A stretch of 63,548 nt of DNA, the filler included, from Octopus bimaculoides (lineage: Eukaryota): NCBI RefSeq assembly GCF_001194135.2. It is 5 parts of 5 records of this genome, joined end to end, with 100 filler letters (N's around TTAATTAATTAA, not from the genome) between each part and the next. Parts side by side here need not be neighbours in the genome. Positions count along the whole stretch, not along the records: positions 28,104 to 54,920 come from NC_068989.1; 4 more parts are not named here. The stretch is one strand, 5' to 3'. Below the pieces are notes generated by a model. The model was not told the origin of the DNA. It saw only the letters and a program-made list of their open reading frames with translations, and searched no databases. Positions 31,747 to 53,051 of this stretch are shown here, one piece after another (the first letter of the stretch is position 1; the number at the start of each line of letters is the position of its first letter). A program made the position numbers and the translations under genes.

Positions 31747-33762
31747 ATGGAAATATTTGTCACAAGCTTTTTAATGTTCAGCTTACTGATAAACCACACA
31801 GTTCAAACATCAACTATAAACAGAACTGAACCCTTCACTTGTCCACCAGTTTTGTGTTCGGAAAGCCCCAGGACAGACCGTTGTTCATGTCAGAAAGACT
31901 GCTATTTATACGATGAATGTTGTTCCGACCGTCTTAATCACACAACTTCTGACTTCGAGACTCCATATCCCTCAATGTCTTATAGTTGTAACAATATTAA
32001 TGGTGGAAATTACTATCAATTTCACCGCTGTCCAACTAACTATGATATAACGGAACATGTGAACAACTGTGAAAATCCTAACTCAGACGAACAACTACAT
32101 CATGTACCTGCTTTTGGTAAAACAAGTAAAAAACTCTATAGGAACTTATATTGTGCTCTCTGTCACAGAGAAGAATATATTTTGTGGAATGTTTCTTACC
32201 AATATTTCTCTGGGGATGATGATCCCAAAATCACTTTTGATAACGCTTCACATATTTTCAATAATGAAAGTAGTGACATAGACAAACAAGTCCCTTCTCA
32301 CGAATTTTACCAATATTTGTATACATGCACTTCTCATATTTCGGTTTGTGCGCAACATAGTACCAATAAAACATTAGAACATCTATGTGAGGACAATGGT
32401 ATGAGACTTGTTAATGCAAATAATACAGTGTTTAGAAATATTTACTGTGCACTTTGCAATGGTATTGAAATTGAGGATATCCGATGCGACATCGATATAC
32501 CATTATATGATTTTCGAAATCAAAAGAGAAAAGCAACTCCTTCTCTGATGATAATTTTTCGTGACCCTAAAATATCTATCGAAATACAATATAAAATGTC
32601 CTACAAGGAATATATTTCTATGCTCTCCTGTGCGAAAAATACTCTCTACGATAAGAATACTCAGGAATGCCGACAAATCTCCTCTAATTCTACTCTAAAT
32701 TGTACTACAACAAGATTAAATGAATCTGAGTATTACATCACTAATGATGGTCTTCTCTACCTGAATAAAACCCATCTTTTGCTGAATCAATCAGATTTCG
32801 GTTTTGATGAAGATGGTACAATTATCATCTGCGTAAAAAGTGTTATCAATGTATTACGAAAGTATTCCGATGTTGAAGCTTATATCACATTAGTGGGACT
32901 AGTGACCTCTATTCCAGCTTTAGCAATCACTATTATAGTTTATCTCTGTGTACCCGATCTCCGTACCTTACCAGGTAAATTACTCATTAGTCTTTTATCA
33001 GCATTGTTTGTAGCTGAGCTTCTCTTTCTTATCTCATCACAAGTCACTACATCTACAGTGCTGTGTAAAACTTTAGCTATAGTGATACATTATTCTTTTC
33101 TAGCGAGTTTCTTCTGGATGAATGTTGTATCATTCGATGCCTGGTACACTTTCTCAGGACTTACACAACTTCGAATTAAAAGAAACGGTACCAAGAGACT
33201 TGTATTTTATTCCTTGTATGCTTGGATCTGTCCATTTGTAATAGTAACAATATCACTGATATTTGAGTACACACCTGGAAATCATGACCTTTCTCCAGAA
33301 TATGGAAACGGTATTTGCTGGATTACAAACGGAAAAAGTCTGCTATGGCTGTTTGGATTCCCTGTTATGCTAATTTTGTGTCTTAATATAACAGCATTTA
33401 TCCTCACTATTAGAGGGCTATATATGTCTAGCAAACTTTCTGCGAAATATTTATCAAAACATAATAAATTGGAGTTCATTGTATGCATAAAACTGTTTTT
33501 TATTATGGGACTTACGTGGACATTTGCATTCCTGTATACCTTTACACAAATTGAAGAATTTTCTCTAATATTTTGTATTTTAAATTCTTTTATTGGATTA
33601 TTTATTTGTCTATCATTTCTCTTCACAAAGATCGTCTGCCGCAATATATTTAAAACATTTCATCTTATTTCAAAATGGCTTCCCACAGAATTTAGTGAGA
33701 TATCTTTAACTTCTCAGAAAACTTCATCGACAAAAATACCAACAAAAGTTTCGTTTGAATAG
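31747..33762 (+). CDS. Class B (secretin-like) / Methuselah-like 7TM GPCR with Cys-rich ectodomain, copy 1 (about 671 aa, intronless CDS)
   Basis: The ORF track starts at a TTG (31726); the first ATG (31747) aligns with the ATGs of the other copies. Signal-like N-terminus MEIFVTSFLMFSLLINHTVQT; SMB-like CSCQKDCYLYDECCSD; two RNxYCALC motifs. Seven hydrophobic segments carry Mth/7tm_2-type motifs (LRTLPGK, HYSFLASFFWMNV, YSLYAW.CP, YG.GICWI, KLFFIMGLTW, ILNSFIGLFI). Confidence 0.93.
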   Translation: MEIFVTSFLMFSLLINHTVQTSTINRTEPFTCPPVLCSESPRTDRCSCQKDCYLYDECCSDRLNHTTSDFETPYPSMSYSCNNINGGNYYQFHRCPTNYDITEHVNNCENPNSDEQLHHVPAFGKTSKKLYRNLYCALCHREEYILWNVSYQYFSGDDDPKITFDNASHIFNNESSDIDKQVPSHEFYQYLYTCTSHISVCAQHSTNKTLEHLCEDNGMRLVNANNTVFRNIYCALCNGIEIEDIRCDIDIPLYDFRNQKRKATPSLMIIFRDPKISIEIQYKMSYKEYISMLSCAKNTLYDKNTQECRQISSNSTLNCTTTRLNESEYYITNDGLLYLNKTHLLLNQSDFGFDEDGTIIICVKSVINVLRKYSDVEAYITLVGLVTSIPALAITIIVYLCVPDLRTLPGKLLISLLSALFVAELLFLISSQVTTSTVLCKTLAIVIHYSFLASFFWMNVVSFDAWYTFSGLTQLRIKRNGTKRLVFYSLYAWICPFVIVTISLIFEYTPGNHDLSPEYGNGICWITNGKSLLWLFGFPVMLILCLNITAFILTIRGLYMSSKLSAKYLSKHNKLEFIVCIKLFFIMGLTWTFAFLYTFTQIEEFSLIFCILNSFIGLFICLSFLFTKIVCRNIFKTFHLISKWLPTEFSEISLTSQKTSSTKIPTKVSFE

Positions 33763-34175
33763 TACAATTGTTGTTCGGAGAACGAAACGAATTTCATAGT
33801 TTTTCATACAAAGGCAAACAACATTTTCGGCCTTTGTAATGGGGCAATATGCTGCATATATGCTCATTAATAATAATGCTTCATATTATAAATGTATTGA
33901 GTGTACAAAATAAAGAACCTCGGTGTAAGTATGTGTATGAACTTGCATGTACTTATTGATGCATATATATCGGTATTCATATGTATGTGTGCACGTATAT
34001 CCTTGTAGCTCTATGCTTGTGCCGATGTGTGCGTGCACTTTTGCTCTCATTTGTTGTGACTGTGCGCATATATGTTTATACTATATATAAGAGTGAGAAC
34101 GTATGAGTGTGTGTTTGTGTGTGTTTGTGTGTGTTTGTGAGTGTGTGTACGCGCGCGTGGATGTGTGTCTGTGTG

Positions 34176-34217
<42 letters not shown>

Positions 34218-35146
34218 NNNNNNNNNNNNNNNNNNNNNNNNNNNNNNNNNNNNNNNNNNNNNNNNNNNNNNNNNNNNNNNNNNNNNNNNNNNNNNNNNNN
34301 NNNNNNNNNNNNNNNNNNNNNNNNNNNNNNNNNNNNNNNNNNNNNNNNNNNNNNNNNNNNNNNNNNNNNNNNNNNNNNNNNNNNNNNNNNNNNNNNNNNN
34401 NNNNNNNNNNNNNNNNNNNNNNNNNNNNNNNNNNNNNNNNNNNNNNNNNNNNNNNNNNNNNNNNNNNNNNNNNNNNNNNNNNNNNNNNNNNNNNNNNNNN
34501 NNNNNNNNNNNNNNNNNNNNNNNNNNNNNNNNNNNNNNNNNNNNNNNNNNNNNNNNNNNNNNNNNNNNNNNNNNNNNNNNNNNNNNNNNNNNNNNNNNNN
34601 NNNNNNNNNNNNNNNNNNNNNNNNNNNNNNNNNNNNNNNNNNNNNNNNNNNNNNNNNNNNNNNNNNNNNNNNNNNNNNNNNNNNNNNNNNNNNNNNNNNN
34701 NNNNNNNNNNNNNNNNNNNNNNNNNNNNNNNNNNNNNNNNNNNNNNNNNNNNNNNNNNNNNNNNNNNNNNNNNNNNNNNNNNNNNNNNNNNNNNNNNNNN
34801 NNNNNNNNNNNNNNNNNNNNNNNNNNNNNNNNNNNNNNNNNNNNNNNNNNNNNNNNNNNNNNNNNNNNNNNNNNNNNNNNNNNNNNNNNNNNNNNNNNNN
34901 NNNNNNNNNNNNNNNNNNNNNNNNNNNNNNNNNNNNNNNNNNNNNNNNNNNNNNNNNNNNNNNNNNNNNNNNNNNNNNNNNNNNNNNNNNNNNNNNNNNN
35001 NNNNNNNNNNNNNNNNNNNNNNNNNNNNNNNNNNNNNNNNNNNNNNNNNNNNNNNNNNNNNNNNNNNNNNNNNNNNNNNNNNNNNNNNNNNNNNNNNNNN
35101 NNNNNNNNNNNNNNNNNNNNNNNNNNNNNNNNNNNNNNNNNNNNNN

Positions 35147-35201: not shown

Positions 35202-35769
35202 TGTGTATATATAACGACGACCACTAAGTGGACAGTTAATGTGCTAGAAGAAGATCACATGTAATGTGTCTAGTAAGACCTAATAGTTCTCAAAAGAAAT
35301 TCAGCGAAATACCAAACCGTATGCTGGCAAGACAGTAAAAATTACATAATTAAAACATTATTATTCGTGGACCGGTTTCGAAATTAACATTCTCTTACCG
35401 AAAACATTTGTTTCTCTTCAGCAGGATTGTAAGGAAATCATAATTCTTAGAATCTTATACAACTTGTTCACCCCTAGAGGCGAACGAGTATATGGTTCTG
35501 CTAATTACAACTTAATGGTAAAAATCAAATGTCTTCGTTTTGGCGCGCTAATTCCGGAAATATGTCTGCAGAAATTGGTTACTGCGTCGCGTATATCCAC
35601 TTTGAGAACTTTATTATGGTTAATCAAATTAAAACATAGGGTAAAAAATCAGATATTAATTAATATCGGTTTATTACCAGATAATAAATCGATATTAATT
35701 AATAACTGTTTTTTTACCCTATGTTTTAATTTGATTATATATATATATATATAGTACCCACCACTTTGA

Positions 35770-36640
35770 CTGAGTACTGAAGCAACAGCGAAACCAGTCA
35801 GCTGTAGACGTGATATACCACGACTTTGCCAAGGCCTTCGACAAGGTTGATCATGGCATATGTCACAAGCTGCGAAACCTTGGTATTACCGGGAAACTTG
35901 GAAAGTGGCTGCATGATTTTCTGAATGGCAGGAGTCAGACAGTTGTAGTCAACGCTGCTCACTCTCAAGGGACACCAATTCTCAGCGGAGTCCCACAGGG
36001 AACTATACCGGGGCCACTACTATTTGTGGTGGCCCTCAGAATGCTCTCCACGGTACAGTCAGCCAATCTGACCAGTTATGCTGACGACAGAAAAGTATCG
36101 CAGTCAGTTAGGAAGCCAGAGGACATCATAAAGCTACAGAAAGGACTGAACGATATCTACAAATGGGCTAGCAAAAATGGCATGCAGTTCAATGCTATGA
36201 AATTTCAAGCACTCCACTATCGGTCCAACACCAGGACCAAAAGGTAATATGATCCCAGTCATATTCGATGCGTGACCTGAGGGTTCACATGAGCTATGAA
36301 GCAACATTCCATGTGCGTATTACCAAGATGGCAACACTGTGCAGACGAATGGCTGGATGGATTCTGAGGACATTCAGAACCAGGACAAGAGAAGTCCTGC
36401 TACTTTCGTTCTCGGCTACTTGGACTACTGCTCCCAACTATGGTCTCCAGAAAGTGTGAAACAAACTAGGGAACTCGAAGCAATCCAACGCCAATATACA
36501 AAGAAGATTGACTCGATGCAAAACATGGGCTACTGGGAGAGGCTAAAGGAGCTGAGTCTCTATTCTCTGGAGAGAAGACGAGAGAGAGATATGTGGTGAT
36601 ATATATTTGAAAGATCTTGGAGGGTTTAGCTCCCAATTCT
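35770..36640 (+). mobile_element. 5'-truncated CR1/Jockey-group LINE reverse transcriptase fragment
   Basis: VIYHDFAKAFDKVDHG, SGVPQGT..GPLLF, YADD, LDYCSQLWSP, LYSLERRRER; frameshifts and stops. Confidence 0.88.
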
Positions 36641-36914: not shown

Positions 36915-39398
36915 GTACTGTGATGACAAGGAAGCAGTAGAGCCAGTTCTCGATTTTTTTAATGAATTTTTCTTGTCCCAAATTTACCTTGCACCAACAA
37001 GATATCAGAACATTTTAGAGCTTGTTTTAGTAACTACGGTAACACTATACGCAATATTACAGTGGAAAAACCCCTTCTTTCAGGCCACATCATGGTTCTC
37101 TGTAACCTGAGATTCCACCAGCCGAAGGCTAACCCTAGTGATCTCTCTCCAGCTCCATCATTCGATACCTTGATACCATGGTTTTCTATGATGTCGATAT
37201 GAAAGAGCTATCACATGTTGACTGGTCTTTCACGCATGCATCCACCTCCTCCAGCATCAAAATGTCTTGGCAGATCTTTGTAGACACTGTCACAAATATA
37301 TGTGCAAAATACATCCCACCAAGACCAGTGAAGACAACTAAGTGCAGAATTCCCCAAAACAGAAAACCTTTGTCGGATAAACAAAAAGAACTAAAACATT
37401 AACAAACTAAAATATTGCCAACAGCCACACATAAATTTGACGGCTATCGGCCTACTCGAATAAAAAAAACTGGGACTTAATTTATCGACCCCGAAAGGAT
37501 GAAAGGCAAAGTCGACCTCGGTGGAATTTGAACTCAGACTGTAAAGACATACGAAATACTGCTAAGCATTTCGCCCGGCGTGCTATTAATGCTGCCAGTT
37601 CACCGCCTTACTCTCTATGGTAATGCCAAAACCATAAGTGAGATACTGCAGAAACAGTACTGTTCTGCTTTCAGCAATCCTGATATGGTCGATCTGGACT
37701 GTATCAGTGATGTAAATCCTCAACACACTATTATTGGAGGTAACGTTTGGCGCCCCTGATGTCTTAGCGATAATGAACGAAATTATACACAATTCATCAG
37801 TGAGCCCAAACAGGTTCCTTGCTTGTGTCCTGAAGGTGTGTCGACACCAACTTGCCTCTCCACTTGCTAATCTGTGAAGGAACTCACTGGATGCTGGCTA
37901 TATTCCTGAAAACTTTGTCCCAGTCTGTTGTCCTTGTTTCCAAAAAGGGAAACAAGTCACTTGCAGTGAACTAACGTCGGATATCACTCACCTCGTTTAT
38001 CATCAAGGTATTTGAGAGGGTAGTGAGATCACGGATAACCTACTTTCTTGAAAGCAACAGACTACTGAACCCTAACCAACATGGGTTCCGTAATGGAAGG
38101 AACTGCCTAACGCAGATACTGCATCAACTTGATGACATTGTGAGAGCCTTGGGAGAGGGCTCGACTACTGATATCATCTACCTTGATTTCAGAAAGGCCT
38201 TTGACAGGGTGGATCATAAGATCCTCTTGAAAAAACTATCCAATATTGGTGTCCCTGGAAAGTTACTACAATGGATCGAGTGTTTCCTGATTGGCAGAAC
38301 CCAACACGCCGTAGTCGAAGGAATAAAATCAAGCCCAGCCAAAGTCAGTAATGGTATTCCACAAGGCACTGTTTTGGGCCCACTTCTTTTCATCATATAC
38401 TGACATCATCAAGTACAGTAACATAAGAATATTTGCAAATGATTCCAAGATCCAGGACATCAAAGAAGTGGGTAATCGGGCATGCCTTCAGTCTGATCTA
38501 CTGGCTGTCATCCAATGGGCGGAAAAGAATAATATGCTGCTGAACTAGGACAAATTTGAACTAATCCACTTCGGAAAAGAGGATACTATGAAACTCCCAC
38601 ACTCTCTTCCTTCACGTGAAAATCTCATGGCATTCAACAACATCAGAGACTTGGGAGTAATTGTAAACAACAACATAAGCTGGGCCGCTCATATAAACAG
38701 CAAAGTTGACATGACCCGCAGAATGTGTTCCTAGATTCTCAGAACTTTCCAGTCGAGAACTATCCACACCATTATCCTTCTTTTCTCCACTTTTGCCCAA
38801 CCCCACCTTGAATACTGTTGTCCACAGTGTTCTCTCTACACGAAAGAAAGTATCATGAAAGTTGAAGCGCCTCAAAGGTTACATAAAAAAAAGATATAGA
38901 TGGTATGACAGACTTTGACTGTTGGGGTCGACTAGAAGAGCTCAAGCTTTATTCTCTCCAACGCCGCTGAGAGCGCTACATCATCTGCATGATGTGGAAA
39001 ATATTCCATCAGCATTGCCCAAATGATGTCGGCATCGCCTTTAAGATACACCCAAGACTTGGGCCCCGTGCTATCCGCCCACAACATAAATTATGCTCGC
39101 ATCACATATCAACAATGCGGCACAATTATTTCACCTCAATTGATACTGTTCTCTTTAACATTACACTAAGACACATTATAGCAGAAACAGACCCCATAAA
39201 GCTCAAGAAATTTTGGAACAAATTCCTTCAAAAAATCCTAGATAAACCTCCTACACCTTACATATGTCTCCGTAAACAATAACACCCTCTTCGAGTGGGC
39301 CTTGTCCGATTCTTGATTTTAATGACTTTGCCAGGTGGTGCTATTGAGTTAGATATGGCCTGGGCCAATAATGGCCGAAACATATCAAAGTAAGTAAG
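36915..39398 (+). mobile_element. Degenerate CR1/Jockey-group LINE (APE end, RT, 3' UTR), interrupted by a SINE
   Basis: APTR..NILELVL, NPNQHGFRNGRNCLTQ, IIYLDFRKAFDRVDH, GIPQGTVLGPLLFII, RIFAND, LYSLQRR.ERY; ends in an AAGT-type short tail near 39398. Confidence 0.88.
37468..37612 (-). mobile_element. Nin/Deu-type SINE fragment nested in the LINE
   Basis: ttaatttatcgaccccgaaaggatgaaaggcaaagtcgacctcgg... breaks the LINE reading frame. Confidence 0.8.
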
Positions 39399-41138: not shown

Positions 41139-41339
41139 GTATACAAAATTTGAACTCCAATTCCTCAAGGTTTCAGATTTCAAAAATTTTGCATTGTCCT
41201 CAAAGTTAAATCTAAAGTGGAAGCGAAATATTTAATCTTGGGGATTACTTTATTAATGTCAGTATTTCTCACGGACAGTTCTATCAAAGACAAACTAAGA
41301 TATACCAGAAAATATATTATTGTTTTTTGACAAGACATA

Positions 41340-43325
41340 ATGGAAATGTATGTCACAGGCTTTTTAATGTTCATCTTATTGATAAACCACACAGTTCAAA
41401 CATCAACTATAAACAGAACTGAAACCTTCAATTGTCCACCAGTTTTGTGCTCTGAAAGCCCCAGGACAGACCGCTGTTCATGTCAGCAAGACTGCTATTT
41501 ATACGATGAATGTTGTTCCGACTTTCTTAATTACACAAATTCTGACCTCGAGCCTCCATATCCCTCAATGTATTACAGCTGTAACAATATTAATGGTGAA
41601 AATTATTATCAATTCGATCGCTGTCCACCTGACTATGATGTAACGGACCACGTAAACAACTGTGAAAATCCTAACTCAGACGAACAACTACATGATGTAC
41701 CTGCTTTTGGTAAAACAAGTCAAAAACTCTATAGGAACTTATATTGTGCTCTCTGCCACGGAGAAGAATATATTTTGTGGAAGATTTCTTACCAATATTT
41801 CTCTGGGAATGATGATCCCAAAATCACTGGTGCTATGACTTTCACTAACGAAAGTTTTGAGGTTGAAAATCAAGTCCCTTCTCGTGAAATTAACCAATAT
41901 CTATACAAATGCACTCCTTATATTTCAGAGTGTACACTGCATAATCCCAATAGCACATTAGAGAATCTATGCAAGAACAAGCCTATGAGACTTGTTGACG
42001 CGAATAATACGGCCTTTAGAAATGTTTACTGTGCACTTTGCAATGGTTTTGAAATTGACGATATCAAGTGTTACATAAGTATACCAATATATTCTTTTCC
42101 ATTTTACGAAGTACATTATTCTCTAATAACACTTTTTGATGTCTCTAACAAACCCCAAAAAATGCAAAATGAAATGTTACTCAGGGACTCTTGTGTGAAA
42201 AATACTCTCTACGATAAGAATACTCAGGAATGCCGACAAATCTCCGCTAATTCTACTCTAAATTGTACTACAACAAGATTAAATGAATCTGAGTATTACA
42301 TCACTAATGATGGTCTTCTCTACTTGAATAATACCCATCTTTTGCTGAATCAATCAGATTTCGGTTTCGATGAAGATGGTACAATTATCATCTGCGTAAA
42401 AGATATTATCAATGTATTACGAAAGTATTCCGATGTTGAAGCTTATATCACGTTAGTGGGGCTTATATTTTCTATCCCTGCTCTAGCAATCACTATTATA
42501 ATCTATCTCTGCATACCTGATCTCCATACCTTACCAGGTAAATTACTCATTAGTCTTTTATCAGCATTGTTTGTAGCTGAGCTTCTCTTTCTTATCTCAT
42601 CACAAGTCACTACATCTACAATTCTGTGTACATCTTTGGCTATTGTGATACATTATTCTTTTCTAGCGAGTTTCTTCTGGATGAATGTTTTATCATTCGA
42701 TGCCTGGTACACTTTCTCAGGACTTACACAACTTCGAAGTAAAGGAAAAGGTACCAAGAGATTTGTATTGTATTCTTTGTATGCTTGGATCTGTCCACTT
42801 GTCATAGTAACAATATCACTGATATTTGAGTACACACCTGGAAATCATGGACTTTCTCCAGAATATGGAAATGGCATTTGCTGGATTACAAACGGAAAAA
42901 GTCTGCTATGGTTATTTGCATTCCCTGTTATGCTCATTTTATGTCTTAACACAACAGCATTTATCCTCACTACCAGAGGGCTATATATGTCTCGCAAACT
43001 TTCTGCGAAATATTTATCAAAACATAATAAATTGGAGTTCATTGTTTGCATAAAACTGTTTTTTATTATGGGACTTACGTGGACATTTGCATTCCTGTAT
43101 ACCTTTACACAAATTGAAGAATTTTCTCTAATATTTTGTATTTTAAATTCTTTTATTGGATTATTTATTTGTCTATCATTTCTCTTCACAAAGATCGTCT
43201 GCCGCAATATACTTAAAACATTTCGTCATATTTCAAAATGGCTTCCCACAGAATCGAGTGAGATGTCTTCAACTTCTGAGAGAACTTTATCTACACAAAT
43301 ACCAACAAAAGTTACGTTTGAATAG
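41340..43325 (+). CDS. Class B / Methuselah-like 7TM GPCR, copy 2 (661 aa, intronless CDS)
   Basis: Uninterrupted ORF, same domain order and conserved cysteines as copy 1; 7TM region nearly identical to copy 3. Confidence 0.93.
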   Translation: MEMYVTGFLMFILLINHTVQTSTINRTETFNCPPVLCSESPRTDRCSCQQDCYLYDECCSDFLNYTNSDLEPPYPSMYYSCNNINGENYYQFDRCPPDYDVTDHVNNCENPNSDEQLHDVPAFGKTSQKLYRNLYCALCHGEEYILWKISYQYFSGNDDPKITGAMTFTNESFEVENQVPSREINQYLYKCTPYISECTLHNPNSTLENLCKNKPMRLVDANNTAFRNVYCALCNGFEIDDIKCYISIPIYSFPFYEVHYSLITLFDVSNKPQKMQNEMLLRDSCVKNTLYDKNTQECRQISANSTLNCTTTRLNESEYYITNDGLLYLNNTHLLLNQSDFGFDEDGTIIICVKDIINVLRKYSDVEAYITLVGLIFSIPALAITIIIYLCIPDLHTLPGKLLISLLSALFVAELLFLISSQVTTSTILCTSLAIVIHYSFLASFFWMNVLSFDAWYTFSGLTQLRSKGKGTKRFVLYSLYAWICPLVIVTISLIFEYTPGNHGLSPEYGNGICWITNGKSLLWLFAFPVMLILCLNTTAFILTTRGLYMSRKLSAKYLSKHNKLEFIVCIKLFFIMGLTWTFAFLYTFTQIEEFSLIFCILNSFIGLFICLSFLFTKIVCRNILKTFRHISKWLPTESSEMSSTSERTLSTQIPTKVTFE

Positions 43326-43467
43326 TACAACTTGTTTGGTGAATGAAAGGAATTTTATAGTTCTTCAAAGAATCCAAAGGCAGCATTTACAGCTTTCATA
43401 ATGGGACAATATTCTGACTAAATGTTCATTAATAACAATATTTCATGATATAAACGTATTGTGTGTA

Positions 43468-43864
43468 TTATGTTGGCAACTAAGTTCCCGCCGTTTTTCT
43501 TTTTTTATTAAAAATTTTTTAAAGGTTTAATAAGAAATAACAACTTATTAATCTATAATGTATTCACTCTTGTTGTTTACAACTTCTTCCCAACGTTCAA
43601 CAAGATTTTCAATACCTCGTTGGTAGAAATCACCCGATTTCGATTCGAAAAATTGATCCAACGAAGCTCTCAATTCTGCATCATTACTGAACGAAACTTT
43701 GCGCATAGCATTTGAAAGAGATCGAAAGAGGTGGAAATCCGTTGGTGCCAAATCAGGAGAGTAATGCGGCTATGGAAGTACTTCCCAGCCATGCGTTTGA
43801 ATGGCTTCCTTGATCATATTGGCGATATGAGGGCGGCGTTGTCGTGCAGAAGAAGAACTCCATG
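43468..43864 (-). mobile_element. Truncated copy of the same mariner (one TIR plus transposase C-terminus)
   Basis: TA at 43466-67 then TTATGTTGGCAACTAAG at the same 3'-flank position as in copy 3; YSPDLAPTDFHLFRSL...YIID*; ends abruptly at 43864. Confidence 0.92.
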
Positions 43865-44116
43865 TTTACATGGACATTTGCATTCCTGTACACCTTTGAA
43901 CAAATTGAAGAATTCTCTCTAATATTTTATGTTTTCAATTCTTTTATTGGATTATTTATTTGTCTATCATTTTTGTTCACAAAGATCGTCTGCCGCAATA
44001 TACTTAAAAGATTTCGTCATGTTTCAAAATGGCCTTCCACCAAACTGAGTGATATATCTTCAACTTCTCAGAAAACTTTATCGACACAAATACCAACGAA
44101 AGTTACGTTTCGGTAG
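43865..44116 (+). pseudogene. C-terminal relic (end of TM6, TM7, tail) of a fourth GPCR copy
   Basis: FTWTFAFLYTFEQIEEFSLIF...IPTKVTFR* aligns with the GPCR C-termini and is followed by homologous 3' UTR to about 44260. The 5' side joins directly to mariner sequence at 43864. Confidence 0.9.
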
Positions 44117-44294
44117 TACAAGAAATGTTGTTCGGTGAACGAAACGAATTTTATTGTTCTTGAAGCAAACAAAGACAAACAATATTTTTGGCCACCATGA
44201 TGAGGTATGTTTATTAATAATATTTCATGTTTTAAATGTATTGTCTGTACAAACTGAGGTGTCTAGGATTATACGTAAGAATTGATACATATAT

Positions 44295-44375: not shown

Positions 44376-44410
<35 letters not shown>

Positions 44411-46365: not shown

Positions 46366-46440
<75 letters not shown>

Positions 46441-46443
46441 ATG

Positions 46444-46737
46444 ACAGTATTAATGAAATAGGAGATGGAATGTGTAATAGACTTTATTGGATACAACACA
46501 TGCTTCAACCCGTTCTGGGTCTCTTCAGGTGCATCAATAAAATATAAAATGTCTCCCTAAAGATTTCTTTAGTCGGCTTACGAATTTAATAGACACATAG
46601 CAGTACGTAAATCAACTCAAGAAATCTCTAGTGAGACTTTCTATTAATGTACCTGAAGAGACGCAGAAAGGGTAGAAACATGTGCTGTACCCAATAAAGT
46701 CTATTACACATTGCATCGCCTATTTTATTAATACTGT
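46444..46737. repeat. Imperfect inverted repeat (arms 46444-46570 and 46619-46737), each arm carrying a hammerhead-like motif; probable Penelope pLTR inversion
   Basis: Arms align as reverse complements. Plus arm GTAC-CTGAAGA-GACGCagaaaGGGTA-GAAACATGTGCT-GTAC; minus arm CTGAAGA-GACCCagaacGGGTT-GAAGCATGTGTT-GTAT. Confidence 0.75.
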
Positions 46738-47138
46738 TACGCCAACTGCCACTTCTCAGTTCCTGCAATAAATCTACGGATAACAGCAGGTAATCGAACT
46801 GTGCCGGTGCTTTACTCATCATCTATTTATACATTTCGTACAATTTGTCCATCATATATATGTATATATAAATATATATATATATATATANNNNNNNNNN
46901 NNNNNNNNNNNNNNNNNNNNNNNNNNNNNNNNNNNNNNNNNNNNNNNNNNNNNNNNNNNNNNNNNNNNNNNNNNNNNNNNNNNNNNNNNNNNNNNNNNNN
47001 NNNNNNNNNNNNNNNNNNNNNNNNNNNNNNNNNNNNNNNNNNNNNNNNNNNNNNNNNNNNNNNNNNNNNNNNNNNNNNNNNNNNNNNNNNNNNNNNNNNN
47101 NTATATATACATATATATATATACATATACATACACAC

Positions 47139-47188
<50 letters not shown>

Positions 47189-47463
47189 CCATAGATATAT
47201 ACATTTAAGCGCATTCATATCTTCCTCAGCCACTACCACCGCCCTCATTTTTCAAAGTCTCTTCTTACCTCTTCCTCATTTCATCTACGACAAACTCTTA
47301 TCAGTTTTATATTTCGGTATCTATATCTATGCGTGCACATATGTGCCTGTGACTAGATGCTTCTGCGGATGTGTGGGTGCACCTTTGCACTCATTTCTTT
47401 TGACTCAGCGCATATATGTGTATACTATAAAGAAGAGTGAAAGTGTATGAGTGTGTATGTGCA

Positions 47464-47496
<33 letters not shown>

Positions 47497-48320
47497 GTTT
47501 GTACACCTGCACGCCTCCTCGCACCTGTCTTTCTGAATGTAGTTGTATGCCCTTTGTATCAGACATATATTTACATATTTCTGCTTGTATCGGACATATA
47601 TTTACATATTTCTGATTAATGGCCGAGTGACATCTCGCTACCCGTCGCTTACCTTCCGAAATGATTTTACTAGGTCTTGTTTCTTTTAATTTTTTTTTTT
47701 TTTAAACTTTTTTCCACTTTTCTCGTCTCTCTTTCTCACTTTATGTCTGTCTCTCACTTTCTGATTTTGATGGAGGCGTGGCGTACATATACATATGTAT
47801 ATATATATGTATATATTTATATATNNNNNNNNNNNNNNNNNNNNNNNNNNNNNNNNNNNNNNNNNATAAAGGGGGTTGTATGATAGTGTATAGAGGAATA
47901 TATTATTTAAAAGAGTTCAAACTCTGTCTGTTTTTTATGTTTTATTTATATTCTTATAAAATTAATGTGTGATATAGAATATGGAATATATACTATAAAT
48001 AGTAAAATGAAATGAAGTATTGAATGTCTTATTGAATATATGAAATATTGAGTATTAAATATATATAGGGGCTAGTATTTTTCCTGCTTCATAGCATTCA
48101 TCAAGGTCCCGTCTGACAGATGTACTGTAGTTGACTGGCTGTCCTATTGCCTTTTATACACATTCCTTTGGACAGTAGCAGTATGTGTTTGGCTATTTTT
48201 AGAGATGATGCCAAACCATTTTTCAATGTTTATTTTTAGAAATGATGACATTTGAGAGATTTTTTTGTGTTTTAGTTATAGGGATAAGATTTTTAAACCC
48301 TAAGTAAGATAAATTTAATC

Positions 48321-48864
48321 ATTGTTTGTCAAGAGTGGGTTTGAATTTCTTAATAAAGTCCTTTTCTTTGCGTTTTCTCTCAATTTTATTCAGGTTGTAA
48401 AGCTTATGGAATGGAAATATCATAAAAGTTTTCGACCACATGTTGCCAGATGGTTACTCAGTGGTATTTGGCGGACCTCTGGTTTTTTTTATCTGTTGTC
48501 GATGCACACGTGAGCGTTCCGATAGCGCATTACCTGTCTGACCAACGTACAGTTCTTCACAATTTGGGCATTTGATGCAGTAGCTTAGATTTCTACTTTT
48601 GCAGTTCATGTTCGCATTGGTGAATATTTTCCCTGTTTTTGTGTTCATATATGGGCCGGTATGAATTGATTGGTATGTACCGCATCGGCTATCATTGCAT
48701 TTGGACACAGTGAATGTTTGATTTTTGTTGCTGAGGTCAAACCTTGCCTTTGTTGATAGCTTTTTCAAGTTTTTAGGTTGTCTCTTACTGAGACGTTTCA
48801 TGCCACAGAAAATATTCAAATATAAATTAGAAGCAGCTCGAGATATATAAACAAACTCGAACAC
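48321..48864 (-). mobile_element. Penelope-like element, GIY-YIG endonuclease fragment (frameshifted)
   Basis: NCKSRNLSYCIKCPNCEELYVGQTGNALSERSRVHRQQI, then in another frame IFPFHKL...KEKDFIKKFKPTL*. Confidence 0.85.
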
Positions 48865-49011
48865 ACATACAGAAGACGTGTGTATTGTTAGTTCGTGGGC
48901 CGGTGCGTTTTAGGCGTAAGAGGATATATTTTCAATGCGCCTGGTATTAAAAATACCTGGAAGTAAATCATAAGCAAGGAAGACAACTCACATCAGGTCC
49001 CTTTTCGGAAC

Positions 49012-49054
49012 GACAGACATCGATGTTTCGTCATTATTGTGACTTTTCAGTGCC
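49012..49054 (-). ncRNA. Minimal type-I hammerhead ribozyme motif (G8A variant)
   Basis: Minus strand GGCA-CTGAAAA-GTCA caataa TGAC-GAAA-CATCGATG-TC-TGTC: stem I, core, perfect 4-bp stem II, palindromic helix III, GUC site. Confidence 0.65.
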
Positions 49055-49709
49055 TCGTACCGAACAAGGCCTGTATAGATAGCTGTTGGGTGAGCAATAC
49101 ACTTCCCAACTACATGGTTACAGGTTAATCCCATTGTGTGGTCCCTTGGATAAGTGGATAAGTGTTCGCTACTGTATCCCCAGTGTGACCAAAGCCTTTT
49201 GAATGGATTTGATACGAAGAAACTGAAAGAAATTTGTAAAGTATTTATATACATAAGTGTGTGTGTGTGTGTGTGTGTGAAAGTTATGTCTATGTGTGAG
49301 TGCATGCGCGTGACTGTGTCTGTGTGAGTGTGTGCGTGTGCGCGTGTGTGCGTGTGCGCGTGTGTGCGTGCGCGCGTGTGCGCGTGCGTGCGCCTGCATG
49401 CTTGCTTGAGCTTGTCACCCTCACTGCCTAGCAGCCATTATTAATTTGTTTACATCACCGTAACCAAGCCGTTGGTCAACACAAACCGGTAAAATAAGTG
49501 CCAGTCTTTAAAAACATAACTGCATCATACTGCATCATCTTAGAAGCAAGATCTCAATGAATGGCAATCAATTGAATATCTGCTCCATTCAGAGACACTT
49601 TGATTTCGGAGTCATAATATTTCCCATGTTTGTCAGGTGAAATAATCGTCAGAGATGTTTTGTTCAGCACAGAAACTGCAGGAGTATCAGAAGAAGTCGT
49701 AAGCTCTTC

Positions 49710-50270
49710 CGATAACGATGACTAAAGTTGTTGCAATGATGCTGGCCCTTCTCTATCTTCAGCAAGTGTCTCCGCGTTAGCCTTTCAGCCTATACTTTGC
49801 CTATACTTTGCCTGAGCGGCATAAGGGTAACATCTGAAGTCTCTAGACAACCACAACCATCTTAAATTAATTTAAGATTCTAAGGCTAGTCATTGGCGTC
49901 TTTCTTCAGATCTTTATGTTTCAAACCAATCTCCGTTTAGGAGCCAAGATCTTACTCACAAAACTGACTGCCAATTTCAAAAGGCAATGCGGCCTCTTAC
50001 CATCTTTGACAAGATCCTCGTCAACTAAGACCTGATATTTAGTGTTATTCAGTTCATTAGAATTATCAAATCTGTCAGGTTAGCACGATTATCTGTTGAG
50101 CACTCTTGAACAGTAAAATGTCTGGTCGGAGAAATGCACTCGTGAACTGCAAGATGTCTGATCGGAGCCATTTTACTGCGCCATCTTCGAAAAAGACACA
50201 TCTACGCATCAAATTCACTTGCATCTCCAGTCAAGAGCTTCTTGTAAGATAGGAATCAAGTCTCCCACAT
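49710..50270 (-). mobile_element. Decayed RLE-clade (HERO-like) fragment, upstream of GPCR copy 3
   Basis: Minus strand keeps LRPDILLF (LRPD at 50131-50120) and ...TKYQVLVDED...PFEIGS, with frameshifts; homologous to the blocks before copies 1 and 2. Confidence 0.7.
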
Positions 50271-50827
50271 TGGATAATGTTGTCTTATAATCATTATACA
50301 TGAGTAACACACGCAATGCTATTTTACTAGTATTTTCAGTCATTTTTGAGAATCTTGTTTTAGAAATAATACATTAGAATACTCCACAGTAAATGGTTTG
50401 CTTCATTATTATGGTGAGTTAAACCTCCTTGTGATAAAGAACATAATGTTCTTTTATCAAAGAAAATCCATACTGGTAGTGGAAAGGAATTCGTTAAATT
50501 TTTCAGGTTGTTGTGCTAATAATTCTACTGTTTTGTATCCCAACGTTATACATTAAGAAATATAATGCTTAGTCTTCACGATTTCATTTTCGGTTTATAT
50601 ATATATATCTATGAGAATGAATTATAAATAAGTAATGATTCAGAGTAAATAACCTTGTAGAAATATAGTTAAGATGGTATTTGTCATACGAAGATCAATA
50701 TATATCAAAGTCTGCTTTATACACACACCTGATGTGAAGGCTATTCGCATAGAACATTTGATTAGTCTATTCACATGAATACTTAAAACATAACCTTGTG
50801 TAATTTCATACTCTAGCAGAGTACATA

Positions 50828-50847
50828 CTTTTTTCCTTTATCTGCAG
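50828..50847 (+). promoter_or_regulatory. 3' splice acceptor of a 5'-UTR intron, GPCR copy 3
   Basis: ttttttcctttatctgcAG|GTATAC, 191 nt upstream of ATG 51039. Confidence 0.7.
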
Positions 50848-51038
50848 GTATACACTTTGTCCTCCAATTCTTCAAGATTTCAATAAATTCTGCATTGTTT
50901 TCTACAGAGTTTCGAAGCGTAATATTTAACCTTAATTTACTTAATCATGAACTTCAGTATTTCCTACGGAACAATCTATCAAAGAGAAGTTAGAATATGA
51001 TTACTTCAAAACATAGTCTTGTATTTCATCAAGACATA

Positions 51039-53051
51039 ATGGAAATATTTGTGACAAACTTTTTAATATACATCTTACTGATAAACCACACAGTTCAAAC
51101 ATCAACTATAAACAGAACAGAACCCTTCAATTGTCCACCAGTTTTGTGTTCTGAAAGCCCCTGGACAGACCGCTGTTCATGTCAGCAAGACTGCTATTTA
51201 TACGATGAATGTTGTTCCGACCGTCTTAATCACACAAATTCTGACCTCGAGCCTCCATATCCCTCAATGTCTTATAGCTGTAACAATATTAATGGAAGAA
51301 ATTACTATCAATTTCACCGCTGTCCAACTAACTATGATATAACGGAACATGTGAACAACTGTGAAAATCCTAACTCAGACGAACAGCTACATCATGTACC
51401 TGCTTTTGGTAAAACAAGTAAAAAACTCTATAGAAATTTATATTGTGCTCTCTGTCACGGAGAACAATATATTTTGTGGAAGATTTCTTACCAATGTTTC
51501 TTTAAGGATGATAATCCAAATGTCACTGTTGATAACTTTTTATATATTTTCAATAAAAAAAATTGTGAGATATACAAACAAGTACCTTCTGAAGAATTTT
51601 ACCAATATTTGTATAGATGCACTCCTTTTGTTTCAGTGTGTGCGCTACATAATACCAATAAAACATTAGAACATCTATGTGAGCACAAGCCAATGAGAGT
51701 TGTCAACGCAAATAATACAGCCTTTAGAAATATTTACTGTGCACTTTGTAATGGTATTGATGCTGACGATATCCAGTGCCACATACATGAAACGAACATT
51801 TTTTCATATTCAAGCAAAGTGTTTTCTCTAACGGCAGTTTTTAATTTCCATACCAATTCTATAGAAATACAAAATATGGAGACAAACAAAGGAAATACTG
51901 TTCTGCAACTACCCTCCTGTCCGAAGCATGCAGTCTACGATATGAATACAAAGCAATGTCGACAAGTTATCTACCACCCGCAACTAAACTGTACAACAAC
52001 AAGTCTAAATGAATCTGAGTATTATATCACTAGTGATGGTCGTCTCTACTTAAATAATACCCAACGTTTACTGAACCAATCAGAATTCAGTTTCGATGAA
52101 GATGGTACAATAATTATTTGTGTAAAAAATGTTACCACAGTGTTACCAAAATATTCTGAGGCTGAAACTTATATCACGTTAGTGGGGCTTATATTTTCTA
52201 TCCCTGCTCTAGCAATCACTATTATAATCTATCTCTGCATACCTGATCTCCATACCTTACCAGGTAAATTACTCATTAGTCTTTTATCAGCATTGTTTGT
52301 AGCTGAGCTTCTCTTTCTTATTTCATCACAAGTCACTACATCTACAATTCTGTGTACATCTTTGGCTATTGTGATACATTATTCTTTTCTAGCGAGTTTC
52401 TTCTGGATGAATGTTTTATCTTTCGATGCCTGGTACACATTCTCAGGACTTACCCAACTTCGAATTAAAAGAAACGGTACCAAGAGACTTGTATTTTATT
52501 CCTTGTATGCTTGGATCTGTCCACTTGTCATAGTAACAATATCACTGATATTTGAGTACACACCTGGAAATCATGGACTTTCTCCAGAATATGGAAATGG
52601 CATTTGCTGGATTACAAACGGAAAAAGTCTGCTATGGTTATTTGCATTCCCTGTTATGCTCATTTTATGTCTTAACACAACAGCATTTATCCTCACTACC
52701 AGAGGGCTATATGTGGCTAGCAAACTTTCTGCGAAATATTTATCAGAACATAATAAATTGGAGTTCATTGTTTGCATAAAACTGTTTTTTATTATGGGAC
52801 TTACGTGGACATTTGCATTCCTGTATACCTTTACAAAAATTGAAGAATTTTCTCTAATATTTTGTATTTTAAATTCTTTTATTGGATTATTTATTTGTCT
52901 ATCATTTCTCTTCACAAAGATCGTCTGCCGCAATATACTTAAAAAATTTCGTCATATTTCAAAATGGCTTCCGCAAGAATCGAGTGAGATGTCTTCAACA
53001 TCTCAGAGAACTTTATCTACACAAATACCAACAAAAGTTACGTTTGAATAG
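51039..53051 (+). CDS. Class B / Methuselah-like 7TM GPCR, copy 3 (about 670 aa from homologous ATG; an in-frame ATG at 50997 could add 14 aa)
   Basis: Uninterrupted ORF homologous to copies 1 and 2; ATG 51039 (MEIFVTNF) aligns with their starts. Confidence 0.92.
   Translation: MEIFVTNFLIYILLINHTVQTSTINRTEPFNCPPVLCSESPWTDRCSCQQDCYLYDECCSDRLNHTNSDLEPPYPSMSYSCNNINGRNYYQFHRCPTNYDITEHVNNCENPNSDEQLHHVPAFGKTSKKLYRNLYCALCHGEQYILWKISYQCFFKDDNPNVTVDNFLYIFNKKNCEIYKQVPSEEFYQYLYRCTPFVSVCALHNTNKTLEHLCEHKPMRVVNANNTAFRNIYCALCNGIDADDIQCHIHETNIFSYSSKVFSLTAVFNFHTNSIEIQNMETNKGNTVLQLPSCPKHAVYDMNTKQCRQVIYHPQLNCTTTSLNESEYYITSDGRLYLNNTQRLLNQSEFSFDEDGTIIICVKNVTTVLPKYSEAETYITLVGLIFSIPALAITIIIYLCIPDLHTLPGKLLISLLSALFVAELLFLISSQVTTSTILCTSLAIVIHYSFLASFFWMNVLSFDAWYTFSGLTQLRIKRNGTKRLVFYSLYAWICPLVIVTISLIFEYTPGNHGLSPEYGNGICWITNGKSLLWLFAFPVMLILCLNTTAFILTTRGLYVASKLSAKYLSEHNKLEFIVCIKLFFIMGLTWTFAFLYTFTKIEEFSLIFCILNSFIGLFICLSFLFTKIVCRNILKKFRHISKWLPQESSEMSSTSQRTLSTQIPTKVTFE

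What the first reader, a model, noticed from the sequence alone, without database searches (positions are those of the whole stretch)
31747..53051. Tandem array of intronless Methuselah-like GPCRs with near-constant 7TM and divergent ectodomains
Three intact paralogs and one relic lie in 21 kb. The 7TM domains are almost identical while the ectodomain varies between fixed cysteines. No GPS/GAIN motif (C.C.HLT.F) is visible before TM1, so they are not classical adhesion GPCRs; the TM motifs fit the class B3 Mth-like group. One signalling core with varied ligand-facing surfaces is what a lineage-specific sensory or recognition receptor repertoire would look like. That function is inference.
Basis: partly seen in the sequence, partly recalled or inferred. 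Interest (0 to 1): 0.75.

Follow-up and report, generated by a model that had tools for sequence, protein, structure and literature searches.

The report
Octopus Methuselah-like receptor array, shared leader
This is part of an already published tandem cluster of Methuselah-like receptor genes in Octopus bimaculoides. The copies trade sequence with each other, and they are spliced to shared upstream non-coding exons rather than being independent intronless genes.

Summary
Three intact ORFs (671, 661 and 670 aa) and an 83-codon relic lie on the + strand, and no assembly gap touches them.

The locus is on an Octopus bimaculoides chromosome. The three genes are Ocbimv22021291m, 290m and 289m, already published as the octopus-specific, tandem "group 4" Methuselah-like GPCR expansion, expressed mainly in the axial nerve cord (Ritschard 2019). 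The core finding is therefore known.

Each protein has a signal peptide, an SMB-like cysteine knot, DUF8401 and a 7tm_2 domain. There is no GPS/GAIN and no Methuselah ectodomain, and the ectodomain model matches no solved fold.

Two things are new here.
- **Gene conversion.** The near-constant 7TM is partly due to it. In the 7TM, copies group by species (bootstrap 100); in the hypervariable middle of the ectodomain they group by ortholog with O. sinensis. That middle evolves at dN/dS of about 0.9, against about 0.3 elsewhere.
- **Shared 5' exons.** Only the CDS is intronless. Each coding exon has a conserved 3' splice site about 210 nt upstream of the ATG. RNA contigs join one identical leader to c1, c2, c3 and an exon made from the relic. 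That relic exon splices to c3 or to another paralog.

The leader's genomic position was not found. Function remains inferred.

The parts
30439..31536 (+). Duplicated non-coding upstream part of unit 1. It ends in a polypyrimidine tract and the 3' splice site CTGCAG| at 31534-31536.
   Evidence: It is 79-82% identical to 40096-41138 and 49860-50847. The acceptor core is conserved in all O. sinensis copies.
31537..33925 (+). c1 coding exon (Ocbimv22021291m). It holds a 210-nt 5'UTR part, the CDS at 31747-33762 (671 aa) and a 3'UTR reaching about 33925.
   Evidence: ORF. 7tm_2 E 4e-30. Exact RNA contigs at 31534-31811 and 33619-33925. Leader joined at 31537. Coordinates match Table S2.
32197..32640 (+). 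c1 hypervariable ectodomain segment (aa ~151-298). The equivalents are c2 41790-42203 and c3 51489-51929.
   Evidence: 48-54% aa identity with indels. dN/dS is 0.8-1.1 between paralogs and 0.88 between the orthologs b3 and s3. Trees of this segment group copies by ortholog.
32872..33681 (+). c1 seven-transmembrane domain plus helix 8 (aa ~376-645).
   Evidence: Pfam 7tm_2. The AF2 model shows seven helices and H8. Nearest solved structures are adhesion GPCRs at 24-26% identity.
41139..43730 (+). c2 coding exon (Ocbimv22021290m). The CDS is 41340-43325 (661 aa). RNA cover continues to at least ~43730.
   Evidence: ORF. RNA contigs start at the acceptor and depth rises 5-8 fold there. The leader ...ACGACAGAGACAAAGCGTA is joined to it in X1, X16 and X39.
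43865..44253 (+). Relic: a copy of the last 83 codons (TM7 plus tail, stop at 44114-44116) and of the 3'UTR of a lost unit.
   Evidence: tblastn 76-81%. blastn 81-82% to the 3' ends of c1, c2 and c3. The frame is open.
43983..44204 (+). Non-coding exon recruited from inside the relic. Acceptor ...TTCACAAAG|ATCG. Donor GATGAG|GTATGT, apparently created by a 17-nt deletion relative to the intact 3'UTRs.
   Evidence: RNA contigs cover exactly 43983-44207, at depth 18-279. The leader is joined at 43983 (X1, X16, X17). The donor is joined to c3 at 50848 (X1, X16, X17, X39) and to another paralog's exon start (X1, X16, X17).
50848..53195 (+). c3 coding exon (Ocbimv22021289m). The CDS is 51039-53051 (670 aa; 684 aa if translation starts at the ATG at 50997).
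   Evidence: ORF. RNA depth jumps at 50846-50848. It is joined to the relic exon and to the leader. DNA depth of c3-specific segments equals that of the flank in three runs.

Best explanation
What it is. The piece is a stretch of the octopus-specific tandem cluster of Methuselah-like class B GPCR genes on an Octopus bimaculoides chromosome. This is 'group 4' of Ritschard et al. 2019, and the genes are Ocbimv22021291m, 290m and 289m.

What each unit encodes. One exon encodes a complete receptor: signal peptide, SMB-like cysteine knot, DUF8401 ectodomain, adhesion/Mth-type 7TM core and a short tail. The DUF8401 part holds two internally duplicated cysteine modules, each ending in (Y/F)RNxYCALC, followed by a beta-rich stalk. 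There is no GAIN/GPS domain.

How it evolves (shown). The paralogs are older than the O. bimaculoides / O. sinensis split. Segmental gene conversion between neighbours keeps the N-terminal part and the 7TM alike within a species. The middle of the ectodomain (aa ~151-300) escapes conversion and evolves almost as fast at non-synonymous as at synonymous sites. Copies are also lost or broken over time: the relic here, and frameshifted copies in O. sinensis.

How it is transcribed (junctions shown; position of the leader inferred). The duplicated unit carries a splice acceptor but not all of its 5' exons. The same non-coding leader is spliced to c1, c2, c3 and to an exon recruited from the relic. 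That relic exon is spliced either to c3 or to a further paralog. The array therefore behaves at least partly as one complex transcription unit. Shared 5' exons are joined to alternative terminal exons, each of which encodes a whole receptor.

What it does (inferred). The products are orphan receptors of arm-cord neurons. They share one signalling core and differ in a ligand- or partner-binding surface.
For: Identity:
- Exact protein matches on chromosome CM046609.1.
- Gene ends and spacing match Scaffold31252 in Table S2 exactly.
- Published annotation gives cd15039 Methuselah-like.
- Published expression is 0.41-0.67 axial nerve cord.

Architecture:
- 7tm_2 and DUF8401.
- SMB-like cysteines, with a significant SMB hit in homologs.
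- Internal repeat in the ectodomain, E 3e-6.
- AF2 models with pLDDT 78-79.
- The 7TM is nearest to adhesion GPCRs.
- No fold match for the ectodomain.

Gene conversion:
- Synonymous divergence is mosaic. 7TM dS is 0.028 for c2-c3, against 0.15-0.17 to c1 and 0.145 for the ortholog pair. Stalk dS is 0.04 for c1-c2, against 0.66-0.77 to c3.
- Trees are incongruent. In the mid segment, b3+s3 has bootstrap 80, b4+s4 100 and b2+s1+s2 100. In the 7TM, b2+b3 and s1+s2+s3 both have 100.
- Mid-segment dN/dS is 0.88 in the ortholog pair against ~0.3 elsewhere, Fisher p = 0.002.

Splicing:
- The acceptor is conserved in all copies of both species.
- Junction contigs appear in four to five runs from at least three studies.
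- The old JGI model 290m runs from the c2 stop to ~12.5 kb upstream of c1, and model 289m starts inside the relic.

Real paralogs:
- Copy-specific DNA has the same depth as the flank in three DNA runs. Shared segments are 2-10 fold deeper.
- A syntenic array exists in O. sinensis.
Against: - The leader exon was not located. Its 30 known bases are absent from the window piece and from all fetched loci. The region where the JGI model starts could not be fetched.
- The RNA evidence is assembled unitigs, not reads or full-length molecules. Their kind is guessed for X1 and X2 and unknown for X16, X17 and X39. Each junction shows only 16-30 nt of its partner.
- Identity of the leader across copies is shown for only ~21-30 nt.
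- Unspliced cover extends 1.3-1.5 kb upstream of the c2 and c3 acceptors. In X39 the relic exon appears to start co-linearly near 43976. Both suggest that local promoters exist as well.
- A dN/dS near 0.9 does not separate diversifying selection from relaxed constraint. The published site tests found no positively selected sites.
- No ligand, G-protein coupling or cell-level expression is known.
Confidence: 0.72

Rival explanations
1. One reading: independent, intronless, single-exon genes, each with its own promoter. The constant 7TM would result from purifying selection alone and the variable ectodomain from diversifying selection.
For: - Each ORF is complete and uninterrupted.
- About 1.25 kb upstream of each ORF is duplicated along with it.
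- Unspliced RNA cover extends 1.3-1.5 kb upstream of the c2 and c3 acceptors, so local promoters may exist.
- 7TM dN/dS is 0.22-0.30 where it has not been recently converted.
Against: - RNA depth jumps 5-10 fold exactly at a conserved acceptor.
- Junction contigs join the same leader to c1, c2, c3 and the relic exon.
- 7TM dS is 0.028 between c2 and c3, and the 7TM clusters by species with bootstrap 100. Selection alone does not explain either.
Confidence: 0.1
2. The common leader is a spliced leader added in trans to the acceptor of separately transcribed units. Each unit's ~1.3 kb upstream transcript would then be an outron.
For: - The identical leader is found on four different acceptors.
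- No copy of it lies in ~27 kb of locus sequence.
- Low-level RNA cover is limited to 1.3-1.5 kb upstream of the acceptors. It is zero just after the relic-exon donor and just before the relic exon.
Against: - Spliced-leader trans-splicing has never been proven in molluscs (PMC3795323).
- The JGI model places a 5' exon ~12.5 kb upstream of c1.
- Long-range cis-splicing across units is shown directly: the relic exon joins c3, 6.6 kb away, and also another paralog.
- c1 also uses two other, different 5' partners.
Confidence: 0.12
3. Each unit has its own near-identical copy of the leader exon. These copies would be hidden in the assembly gaps that lie upstream of every copy.
For: - An N gap lies upstream of c1 (29283-29974), of c2 (34218-35146) and of c3 (46891-47101, 47825-47865).
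- Leader identity is only shown over ~21-30 nt.
Against: - The duplicated unit ends well before the gaps. About 5 kb of transposon-derived sequence lies between the gap and unit 2.
- No gap lies between c2 and the relic exon, yet that exon also receives the leader.
- Flanking non-coding DNA is only ~80% identical between units.
Confidence: 0.1
4. The fast-evolving middle of the ectodomain reflects relaxed constraint in redundant, slowly decaying copies. It would not be a selected diversity of binding surfaces.
For: - dN/dS is ~0.9, not clearly above 1.
- Published tests found a uniform omega of 0.306 and no selected sites.
- c1 and c2 have lost a cysteine pair that is conserved across the family.
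- Two O. sinensis copies carry frameshifts, and a relic exists.
- The AF2 model is least confident at aa 250-300.
Against: - All three ORFs are intact after divergence deeper than the species split.
- 22 cysteines and both (Y/F)RNxYCALC motifs are kept inside the variable part.
- The rest of each gene is under purifying selection.
- All three copies are transcribed.
Confidence: 0.35
5. The copies are uncollapsed haplotypes or an assembly artefact.
For: The assembly is gappy and the spacing between copies is only estimated.
Against: - The copies differ by 18-21% in DNA, flanks included.
- c3-specific unitigs have the same depth as the unique flank in three DNA runs from different years. Shared segments are 2-10 fold deeper.
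- An independent O. sinensis assembly has a matching tandem array with copy-by-copy orthologs.
Confidence: 0.01

Closest known systems
Octopus 'group 4' Methuselah-like GPCR expansion (Ritschard et al. 2019, PMC6408891)
   Same: These are the same genes. Ocbimv22021291m, 290m and 289m on Scaffold31252 match c1, c2 and c3 in length, ends and spacing. [quoted passage not shown]
   Different: The passages of that paper read here report uniform purifying selection (omega 0.306) and describe no domain mosaic. They do not describe gene conversion inside the genes, the DUF8401/SMB ectodomain, the shared leader or the exon made from the relic. Gene conversion is mentioned only in general terms.
Drosophila Methuselah / Methuselah-like family (de Mendoza et al. 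2016, PMC4768249)
   Same: Class B 7tm_2 core of the Mth/Mthl type. Like the old members Mthl1, 5, 14 and 15, these receptors lack the Methuselah ectodomain. Lineage-specific tandem expansions are typical of the family.
   Different: No Methuselah_N (PF06652) domain is present. The ectodomain here is SMB-like plus DUF8401. No functional data exist for this type.
Adhesion GPCRs (ADGRG2, ADGRL3, ADGRD1, ADGRE5)
   Same: They are the closest solved 7TM structures and sequences: 24-26% identity, phmmer E ~1e-17, TM-score to target 0.74-0.84. They also have a large cysteine-rich ectodomain.
   Different: There is no GAIN domain, no GPS cleavage motif and no recognisable tethered-agonist sequence before TM1. 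Activation by a Stachel peptide is therefore not expected.
Mammalian odorant receptor genes
   Same: The whole CDS lies in one long last exon, preceded by one to four short, alternatively spliced 5' non-coding exons. In one case (OR51E2) the coding exon is spliced to a 5' non-coding exon of a neighbouring OR pseudogene (PMC4982115). This parallels c3 using an exon made from the relic.
   Different: They belong to a different GPCR class (A, not B) and have no large ectodomain. Here one leader is seen on at least four acceptors of neighbouring paralogs.
Clustered protocadherin and UGT1A loci
   Same: Tandem variable units are combined with shared exons by alternative splicing. From my own knowledge, gene conversion in clustered protocadherins homogenises some segments while other ectodomain parts stay diverse.
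   Different: The polarity is reversed. In those loci each variable exon has its own promoter and is spliced to shared 3' coding exons. Here the shared exons are 5' and non-coding, and every variable exon encodes a whole protein.

Membership tests
Class B (secretin/adhesion) GPCR, Pfam 7tm_2 | A 7tm_2 profile match above the gathering score, and seven transmembrane helices | tested here: met
   PF00002 scores 103-105 bits against a cut-off of 20.6, E ~1e-30, in all three copies. The AF2 model shows seven long helices plus helix 8.
Methuselah / Methuselah-like (7tmB3) | The 7TM domain groups with Mth/Mthl (CDD cd15039, 7TM phylogeny) | not testable with these tools
   No CDD library or Drosophila sequences were on hand. 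Published InterProScan of these same genes gives cd15039 at E 1.9e-83 (c3) and 5.6e-85 (c2). A published tree places them with Mth/Mthl.
Methuselah / Methuselah-like (7tmB3) | Methuselah ectodomain (PF06652; ten cysteines forming five disulfides) | tested here: not met
   No PF06652 hit at E <= 1. No Mth ectodomain chain among the PDB sequence hits. No fold match. By the 2016 definition this domain is arthropod-specific and is not required of Mthl members.
Adhesion GPCR (class B2) | GAIN domain with a GPS cleavage motif directly before TM1 | tested here: not met
   No GPS or GAIN Pfam hit. The ectodomain model (pLDDT 79) has no PDB match better than E = 1.1, although many GAIN structures are solved. 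The sequence before TM1 is ...GTIIICVKSVINVLRKYSD..., with no HL(T/S) site.
Adhesion GPCR (class B2) | 7TM core closer to adhesion receptors than to secretin-type receptors | tested here: met
   The top 13 fold hits and the top 24 sequence hits are all adhesion GPCRs, at 24-26% identity. Secretin-type receptors score 14-19%.
SMB + DUF8401 + 7tm_2 receptors (invertebrate-wide architecture) | DUF8401 (PF28443) ectodomain | tested here: met
   Precomputed Pfam hits on the window's own proteins. A profile of ectodomains alone finds the same architecture in crustaceans, spiders, ticks, bivalves, gastropods and a hemichordate. PF28443 is absent from the local Pfam copy, so I did not rescore it.
SMB + DUF8401 + 7tm_2 receptors (invertebrate-wide architecture) | Somatomedin B domain (PF01033; eight cysteines) | tested here: inconclusive
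   Sub-threshold hits of 11.7-15.3 bits against a cut-off of 23.1. Seven cysteines have canonical SMB spacing (C32-x4-C-x8-C-x-C-x3-C-x5-CC) and the eighth is displaced. Aligned homologs carry significant PF01033 hits.
Variable-exon clusters of the protocadherin / UGT1A type | Variable 5' exons with their own promoters, spliced to shared 3' coding exons | tested here: not met
   Each unit ends in its own stop codon and 3'UTR. The shared exons are 5' and non-coding.
Spliced-leader trans-splicing | The same short leader on many unrelated mRNAs, donated by a dedicated SL RNA gene | not testable with these tools
   Arbitrary sequences cannot be searched in the RNA runs. The leader was seen only on this cluster's acceptors. 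It is not proven to occur in molluscs.

The most novel reading that the evidence does not exclude
The array is a single complex locus. One upstream promoter and leader exon, plus a relay exon recruited from a dead copy, is spliced to one of many tandem terminal exons, each encoding a complete receptor with a different ectodomain. Choice of splice and polyadenylation site would then decide which receptor an arm-cord neuron makes. Gene conversion keeps the signalling half uniform while the binding half stays diverse. This would be a receptor-choice architecture with the opposite polarity to clustered protocadherins.
Probability: 0.45. Interest if true: 0.7.

Novelty: already known. Interest (0 to 1): 0.42.

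Why it matters
The cluster as a gene family is already published, so the core finding adds nothing new. The two added observations matter in different ways.

- **Gene conversion.** It mixes the histories of different parts of these genes. Whole-gene trees and whole-gene dN/dS, as used so far, will therefore mis-date duplications and average away a fast-evolving ectodomain segment.
- **Shared 5' exons.** If they are confirmed, current annotations are wrong, and the published per-gene expression values rest partly on reads from regions that are nearly identical between copies. Some annotations give separate single-exon genes, one a 24 kb model that swallows a neighbour, and the O. sinensis models are truncated. 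Confirmation would also make the question of how an octopus arm neuron chooses among near-identical receptors testable with long-read and single-nucleus RNA data.

DUF8401 is a widespread invertebrate receptor ectodomain with no solved or recognisable fold and no known ligand.

Tried and rejected
- **Locating the leader.** I searched for the 17-, 20- and 30-nt versions in the window and in nine loci, allowing up to 5 edits, and found nothing. The region ~12.5 kb upstream of c1, where the JGI model starts, lies 2.5 kb beyond the furthest DNA I could fetch.
- **Testing the distant paralog.** I tried to see whether the paralog 59 kb upstream (P0021) also receives the leader, which would have separated cis- from trans-splicing.
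- **DNA reads over 40000-53400.** I repeated it on c3 only.
- **Fold search of the ectodomain against PDB.** Nothing scored better than E = 1.1, so neither a GAIN nor a Methuselah fold can be claimed.
- **Retrogene origin of the intronless CDS.** Rejected. Gastropod, bivalve and starfish homologs also have a single coding exon, while a bug homolog has introns.
- **Haplotype artefact.** Rejected.
- **120-aa antisense ORFs inside each 7TM region** (for example 33282-33644 on the - strand). I treated them as by-products of the conserved sense frame and did not pursue them.
- **Literature.** Searches for shared first exons in octopus gene clusters found nothing relevant.

Full report
**1. What is in the sequence**

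The piece (28104-54920) holds three long ORFs on the + strand:
- c1 at 31747-33762 (671 aa)
- c2 at 41340-43325 (661 aa)
- c3 at 51039-53051 (670 aa, or 684 aa from an in-frame ATG at 50997)

They are 79-81% identical as proteins. tblastn finds one further fragment at 43865-44113, matching the last 83 residues. Its frame is still open.

The N runs lie at 29283-29974, 34218-35146, 46891-47101 and 47825-47865. All are intergenic, flanked by CA/TA microsatellites, and outside the repeated unit. They therefore affect spacing only, not any reading frame.

The repeated DNA unit is ~3.4 kb: ~1.25 kb upstream, the CDS and ~150 nt downstream, at 79-82% identity. The spacers hold decayed reverse-transcriptase fragments, a mariner transposase and a weak GIY-YIG match.

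**2. Where it comes from, and what is already known**

The proteins match exactly on Octopus bimaculoides chromosome CM046609.1, at about 74.76-74.79 Mb. All close relatives are from Octopus species. The next hits are only 25-31% identical.

Ritschard et al. 2019 (PMC6408891) described an octopus-specific 'group 4' of class B receptors. They called it Methuselah-like, derived from an Mthl15-like ancestor and tandemly arranged. They found a uniform omega of 0.306 and no positively selected sites.

Their Table S2 lists three genes on Scaffold31252:
- Ocbimv22021291m at 28498-30513, which is 2016 bp, exactly the length of c1
- 290m, ending at 18935
- 289m, ending at 9209

These positions reproduce the c1-c2 and c1-c3 distances in the window to the base. 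Their Pfam coordinates also match mine.

Published expression shares are as follows:
- Axial nerve cord: 0.41 (c1), 0.65 (c2), 0.67 (c3)
- c1 in testes: 0.37
- Skin: 0.09-0.16
- Suckers: 0.01-0.06

Their InterProScan gives CDD cd15039 '7tmB3_Methuselah-like' at E 1.9e-83 and 5.6e-85. The core of the finding is therefore already published.

**3. The protein**

All three copies have a strong 7tm_2 match and only a sub-threshold Somatomedin B match near residue 40. Precomputed annotation adds PF28443, DUF8401, over the ectodomain.

Seven cysteines have canonical SMB spacing. Distant homologs aligned there carry significant SMB hits.

The ectodomain contains an internal duplication: two modules, each ending in (Y/F)RNxYCALC.

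AlphaFold models have mean pLDDT 78 for the full length and 79 (pTM 0.71) for the ectodomain alone.
- The 7TM core is closest to adhesion GPCRs in both fold and sequence.
- The ectodomain has no PDB match better than E = 1.1. So there is no GAIN fold and no Methuselah ectodomain fold, in agreement with Pfam.

By the published definition, Methuselah-like membership rests on the 7TM domain. Old members such as Mthl1, 5, 14 and 15 also lack the Methuselah ectodomain.

A profile built from ectodomains alone finds SMB/DUF8401/7tm_2 receptors in crustaceans, spiders, ticks, bivalves, gastropods and a hemichordate. The whole-protein search adds an insect, a springtail, a nemertean and echinoderms. 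The architecture is therefore old.

The single coding exon is old too. A gastropod, a bivalve and a starfish homolog each occupy exactly 3 x length + 3 bases of genome, whereas a bug homolog has introns.

**4. How the copies evolve**

Identity is uneven along the protein:

| Region | aa identity |
|---|---|
| Residues 1-150 | 84-93% |
| Residues 151-300 | 48-54%, with indels |
| Stalk | 95% (c1-c2), 68% to c3 |
| 7TM | 92-96% |

Twenty-two ectodomain cysteines are fixed. A further pair that is conserved across the family survives only in c3.

Synonymous divergence is a mosaic:
- 7TM: 0.028 for c2-c3, but 0.15-0.17 to c1
- Stalk: 0.04 for c1-c2, but 0.66-0.77 to c3
- Middle segment: 0.30-0.48 in all pairs

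The syntenic O. sinensis region has its own array: two frameshifted copies, two intact copies and a relic. Bootstrapped trees for each segment disagree:
- In the middle segment, copies pair by ortholog: b3+s3 at 80, b4+s4 at 100, b2+s1+s2 at 100.
- In the 7TM, copies pair by species: b2+b3 at 100, s1+s2+s3 at 100.

So the paralogs predate the species split, and gene conversion has since homogenised parts of them. In the 7TM the c2-c3 dS of 0.028 lies far below the b3-s3 ortholog value of 0.145. In the stalk the c1-c2 dS of 0.04 compares with 0.25.

In the cleanest comparison, the ortholog pair b3-s3, dN/dS is 0.88 in the middle segment against 0.20-0.30 elsewhere. Fisher p = 0.002.

The near-constant 7TM thus reflects purifying selection plus conversion. 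The variable middle is either diversified or relaxed; these data cannot tell which.

**5. Are the copies real?**

In three DNA runs from different years, c3-specific segments have the same depth as the unique flank: 26/22/51 against 27/19/48. Segments shared with paralogs are 2-10 fold deeper. Together with 18-21% divergence and copy-by-copy orthologs in another species, this rules out haplotigs.

The array also continues beyond the window, with at least a fourth and the start of a fifth copy. A 45%-identical paralog lies 59 kb upstream.

**6. Transcription: not intronless**

All three units, and all four O. sinensis copies, carry a polypyrimidine tract and CTGCAG|GTATAC ~210 nt upstream of the ATG. 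RNA contigs start at that site, and depth rises 5-10 fold there.

The sequence attached upstream is the same in each case:
- c1...ACAGAGACAAAGCGTAA, in two runs
- c2...ACGACAGAGACAAAGCGTA, in three runs
- c3: in one run

The amount of leader visible is what a 31-mer graph would keep if the leaders were identical.

The relic is used too. Contigs cover exactly 43983-44204, at depth up to 279.
- Upstream they are joined to the same leader, now read for 30 nt: ATAAGCCACGACAGAGACAAAGCGTAAC plus AG.
- Downstream they are joined from a GAG|GTATGT donor either to the c3 exon at 50848 or to a paralogous exon start that is not in the available sequence.

The donor appears to have arisen from a 17-nt deletion relative to intact 3'UTRs.

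The old JGI models fit this picture. Model 289m starts inside the relic, and 290m starts ~12.5 kb upstream of c1 and skips over it.

c1 also has two other 5' partners. The relic-exon isoform carries six upstream ATGs.

**7. What is not settled**

The leader's genomic position could not be reached. Three readings remain:
- One cis exon upstream of c1. I favour this one, because long-range cis-splicing between units is directly shown for the relic exon and because of the JGI model.
- Spliced-leader trans-splicing, which is unproven in molluscs.
- Private leader copies hidden in the gaps.

Unspliced cover 1.3-1.5 kb upstream of c2 and c3, and a co-linear start of the relic exon in one run, suggest that local promoters exist as well. 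The RNA evidence is assembled unitigs whose library kind is guessed or unknown.

**8. Verdict**

'Intronless' and 'constant by selection' need correcting.

The closest functional parallel in gene structure is the mammalian odorant receptor gene: 5' non-coding exons, a single coding exon, and occasional use of a neighbouring pseudogene's exon. Function, meaning ligand, coupling and cell-level choice, is inference only.

Noticed in passing
L004:18000-20012 (O. sinensis, CM016868.1): This copy has an intact 670-aa ORF orthologous to c3. The public annotation gives only a 417-aa product, named 'latrophilin receptor-like protein A'. The neighbouring 387-aa model sits on a copy with two frameshifts. 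Either the long-read assembly has indel errors or these are pseudogenes.
   Followed up: partly
window 32203-32205 and 32272-32274 (c1 codons 153 and 176), and the same columns in c2: c1 and c2 have both lost the two cysteines (C153 and C176 in c3) that are nearly invariant across the wider family and are kept in c3, s3 and s4. Losing both together suggests they form a disulfide pair.
   Followed up: partly
window 35810-36600, 38023-38550, 48454-48864 (-), 53494-54207 (-): The spacers are filled with decayed mobile elements: two reverse-transcriptase fragments (RVT_1, E 1e-14 and 7e-18), a weak GIY-YIG match (E 0.002, below threshold, possibly Penelope-like) and a mariner-type transposase (E 6e-24).
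   Followed up: partly
window 33964-34147 and 47308-47491: A 184-nt stretch just downstream of c1, ending at the gap, is 81% identical to a stretch between the two gaps upstream of c3. The ancestral repeat unit was probably longer than the 3.4 kb that is now recognisable.
   Followed up: no
L005:15145-15379 (O. sinensis): A second relic of the same kind (TM7 plus tail) lies ~280 nt after copy s4 in O. sinensis. It resembles the relic ~540 nt after c2 here. I did not test whether it is orthologous or is also used as an exon.
   Followed up: no
L003:10001-11965 (paralog P0021, 59 kb upstream): This more distant paralog is at least 90% identical in protein between O. bimaculoides and O. sinensis (a partial O. 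vulgaris model shares its 90% cluster), so it is far more conserved than c1-c3. It also has a candidate acceptor (TTTGTTCACAG|) ~150 nt before its ATG.
   Followed up: partly
window 33282-33644 (-), 42845-43207 (-), 52571-52933 (-): A 120-aa antisense ORF is preserved inside the 7TM region of all three copies. It is most likely a by-product of the conserved sense frame.
   Followed up: no
window 35621-35737 and 46444-46737: Two perfect-register inverted self-matches (117 nt at 92% and ~300 nt at 78%) lie in the spacers. They are probably transposon termini or hairpins.
   Followed up: no
window 41207: All four RNA runs show C where the assembly has T, in the c2 5'UTR. This could be a polymorphism, an assembly error or A-to-I-unrelated variation. 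It was not examined further.
   Followed up: no
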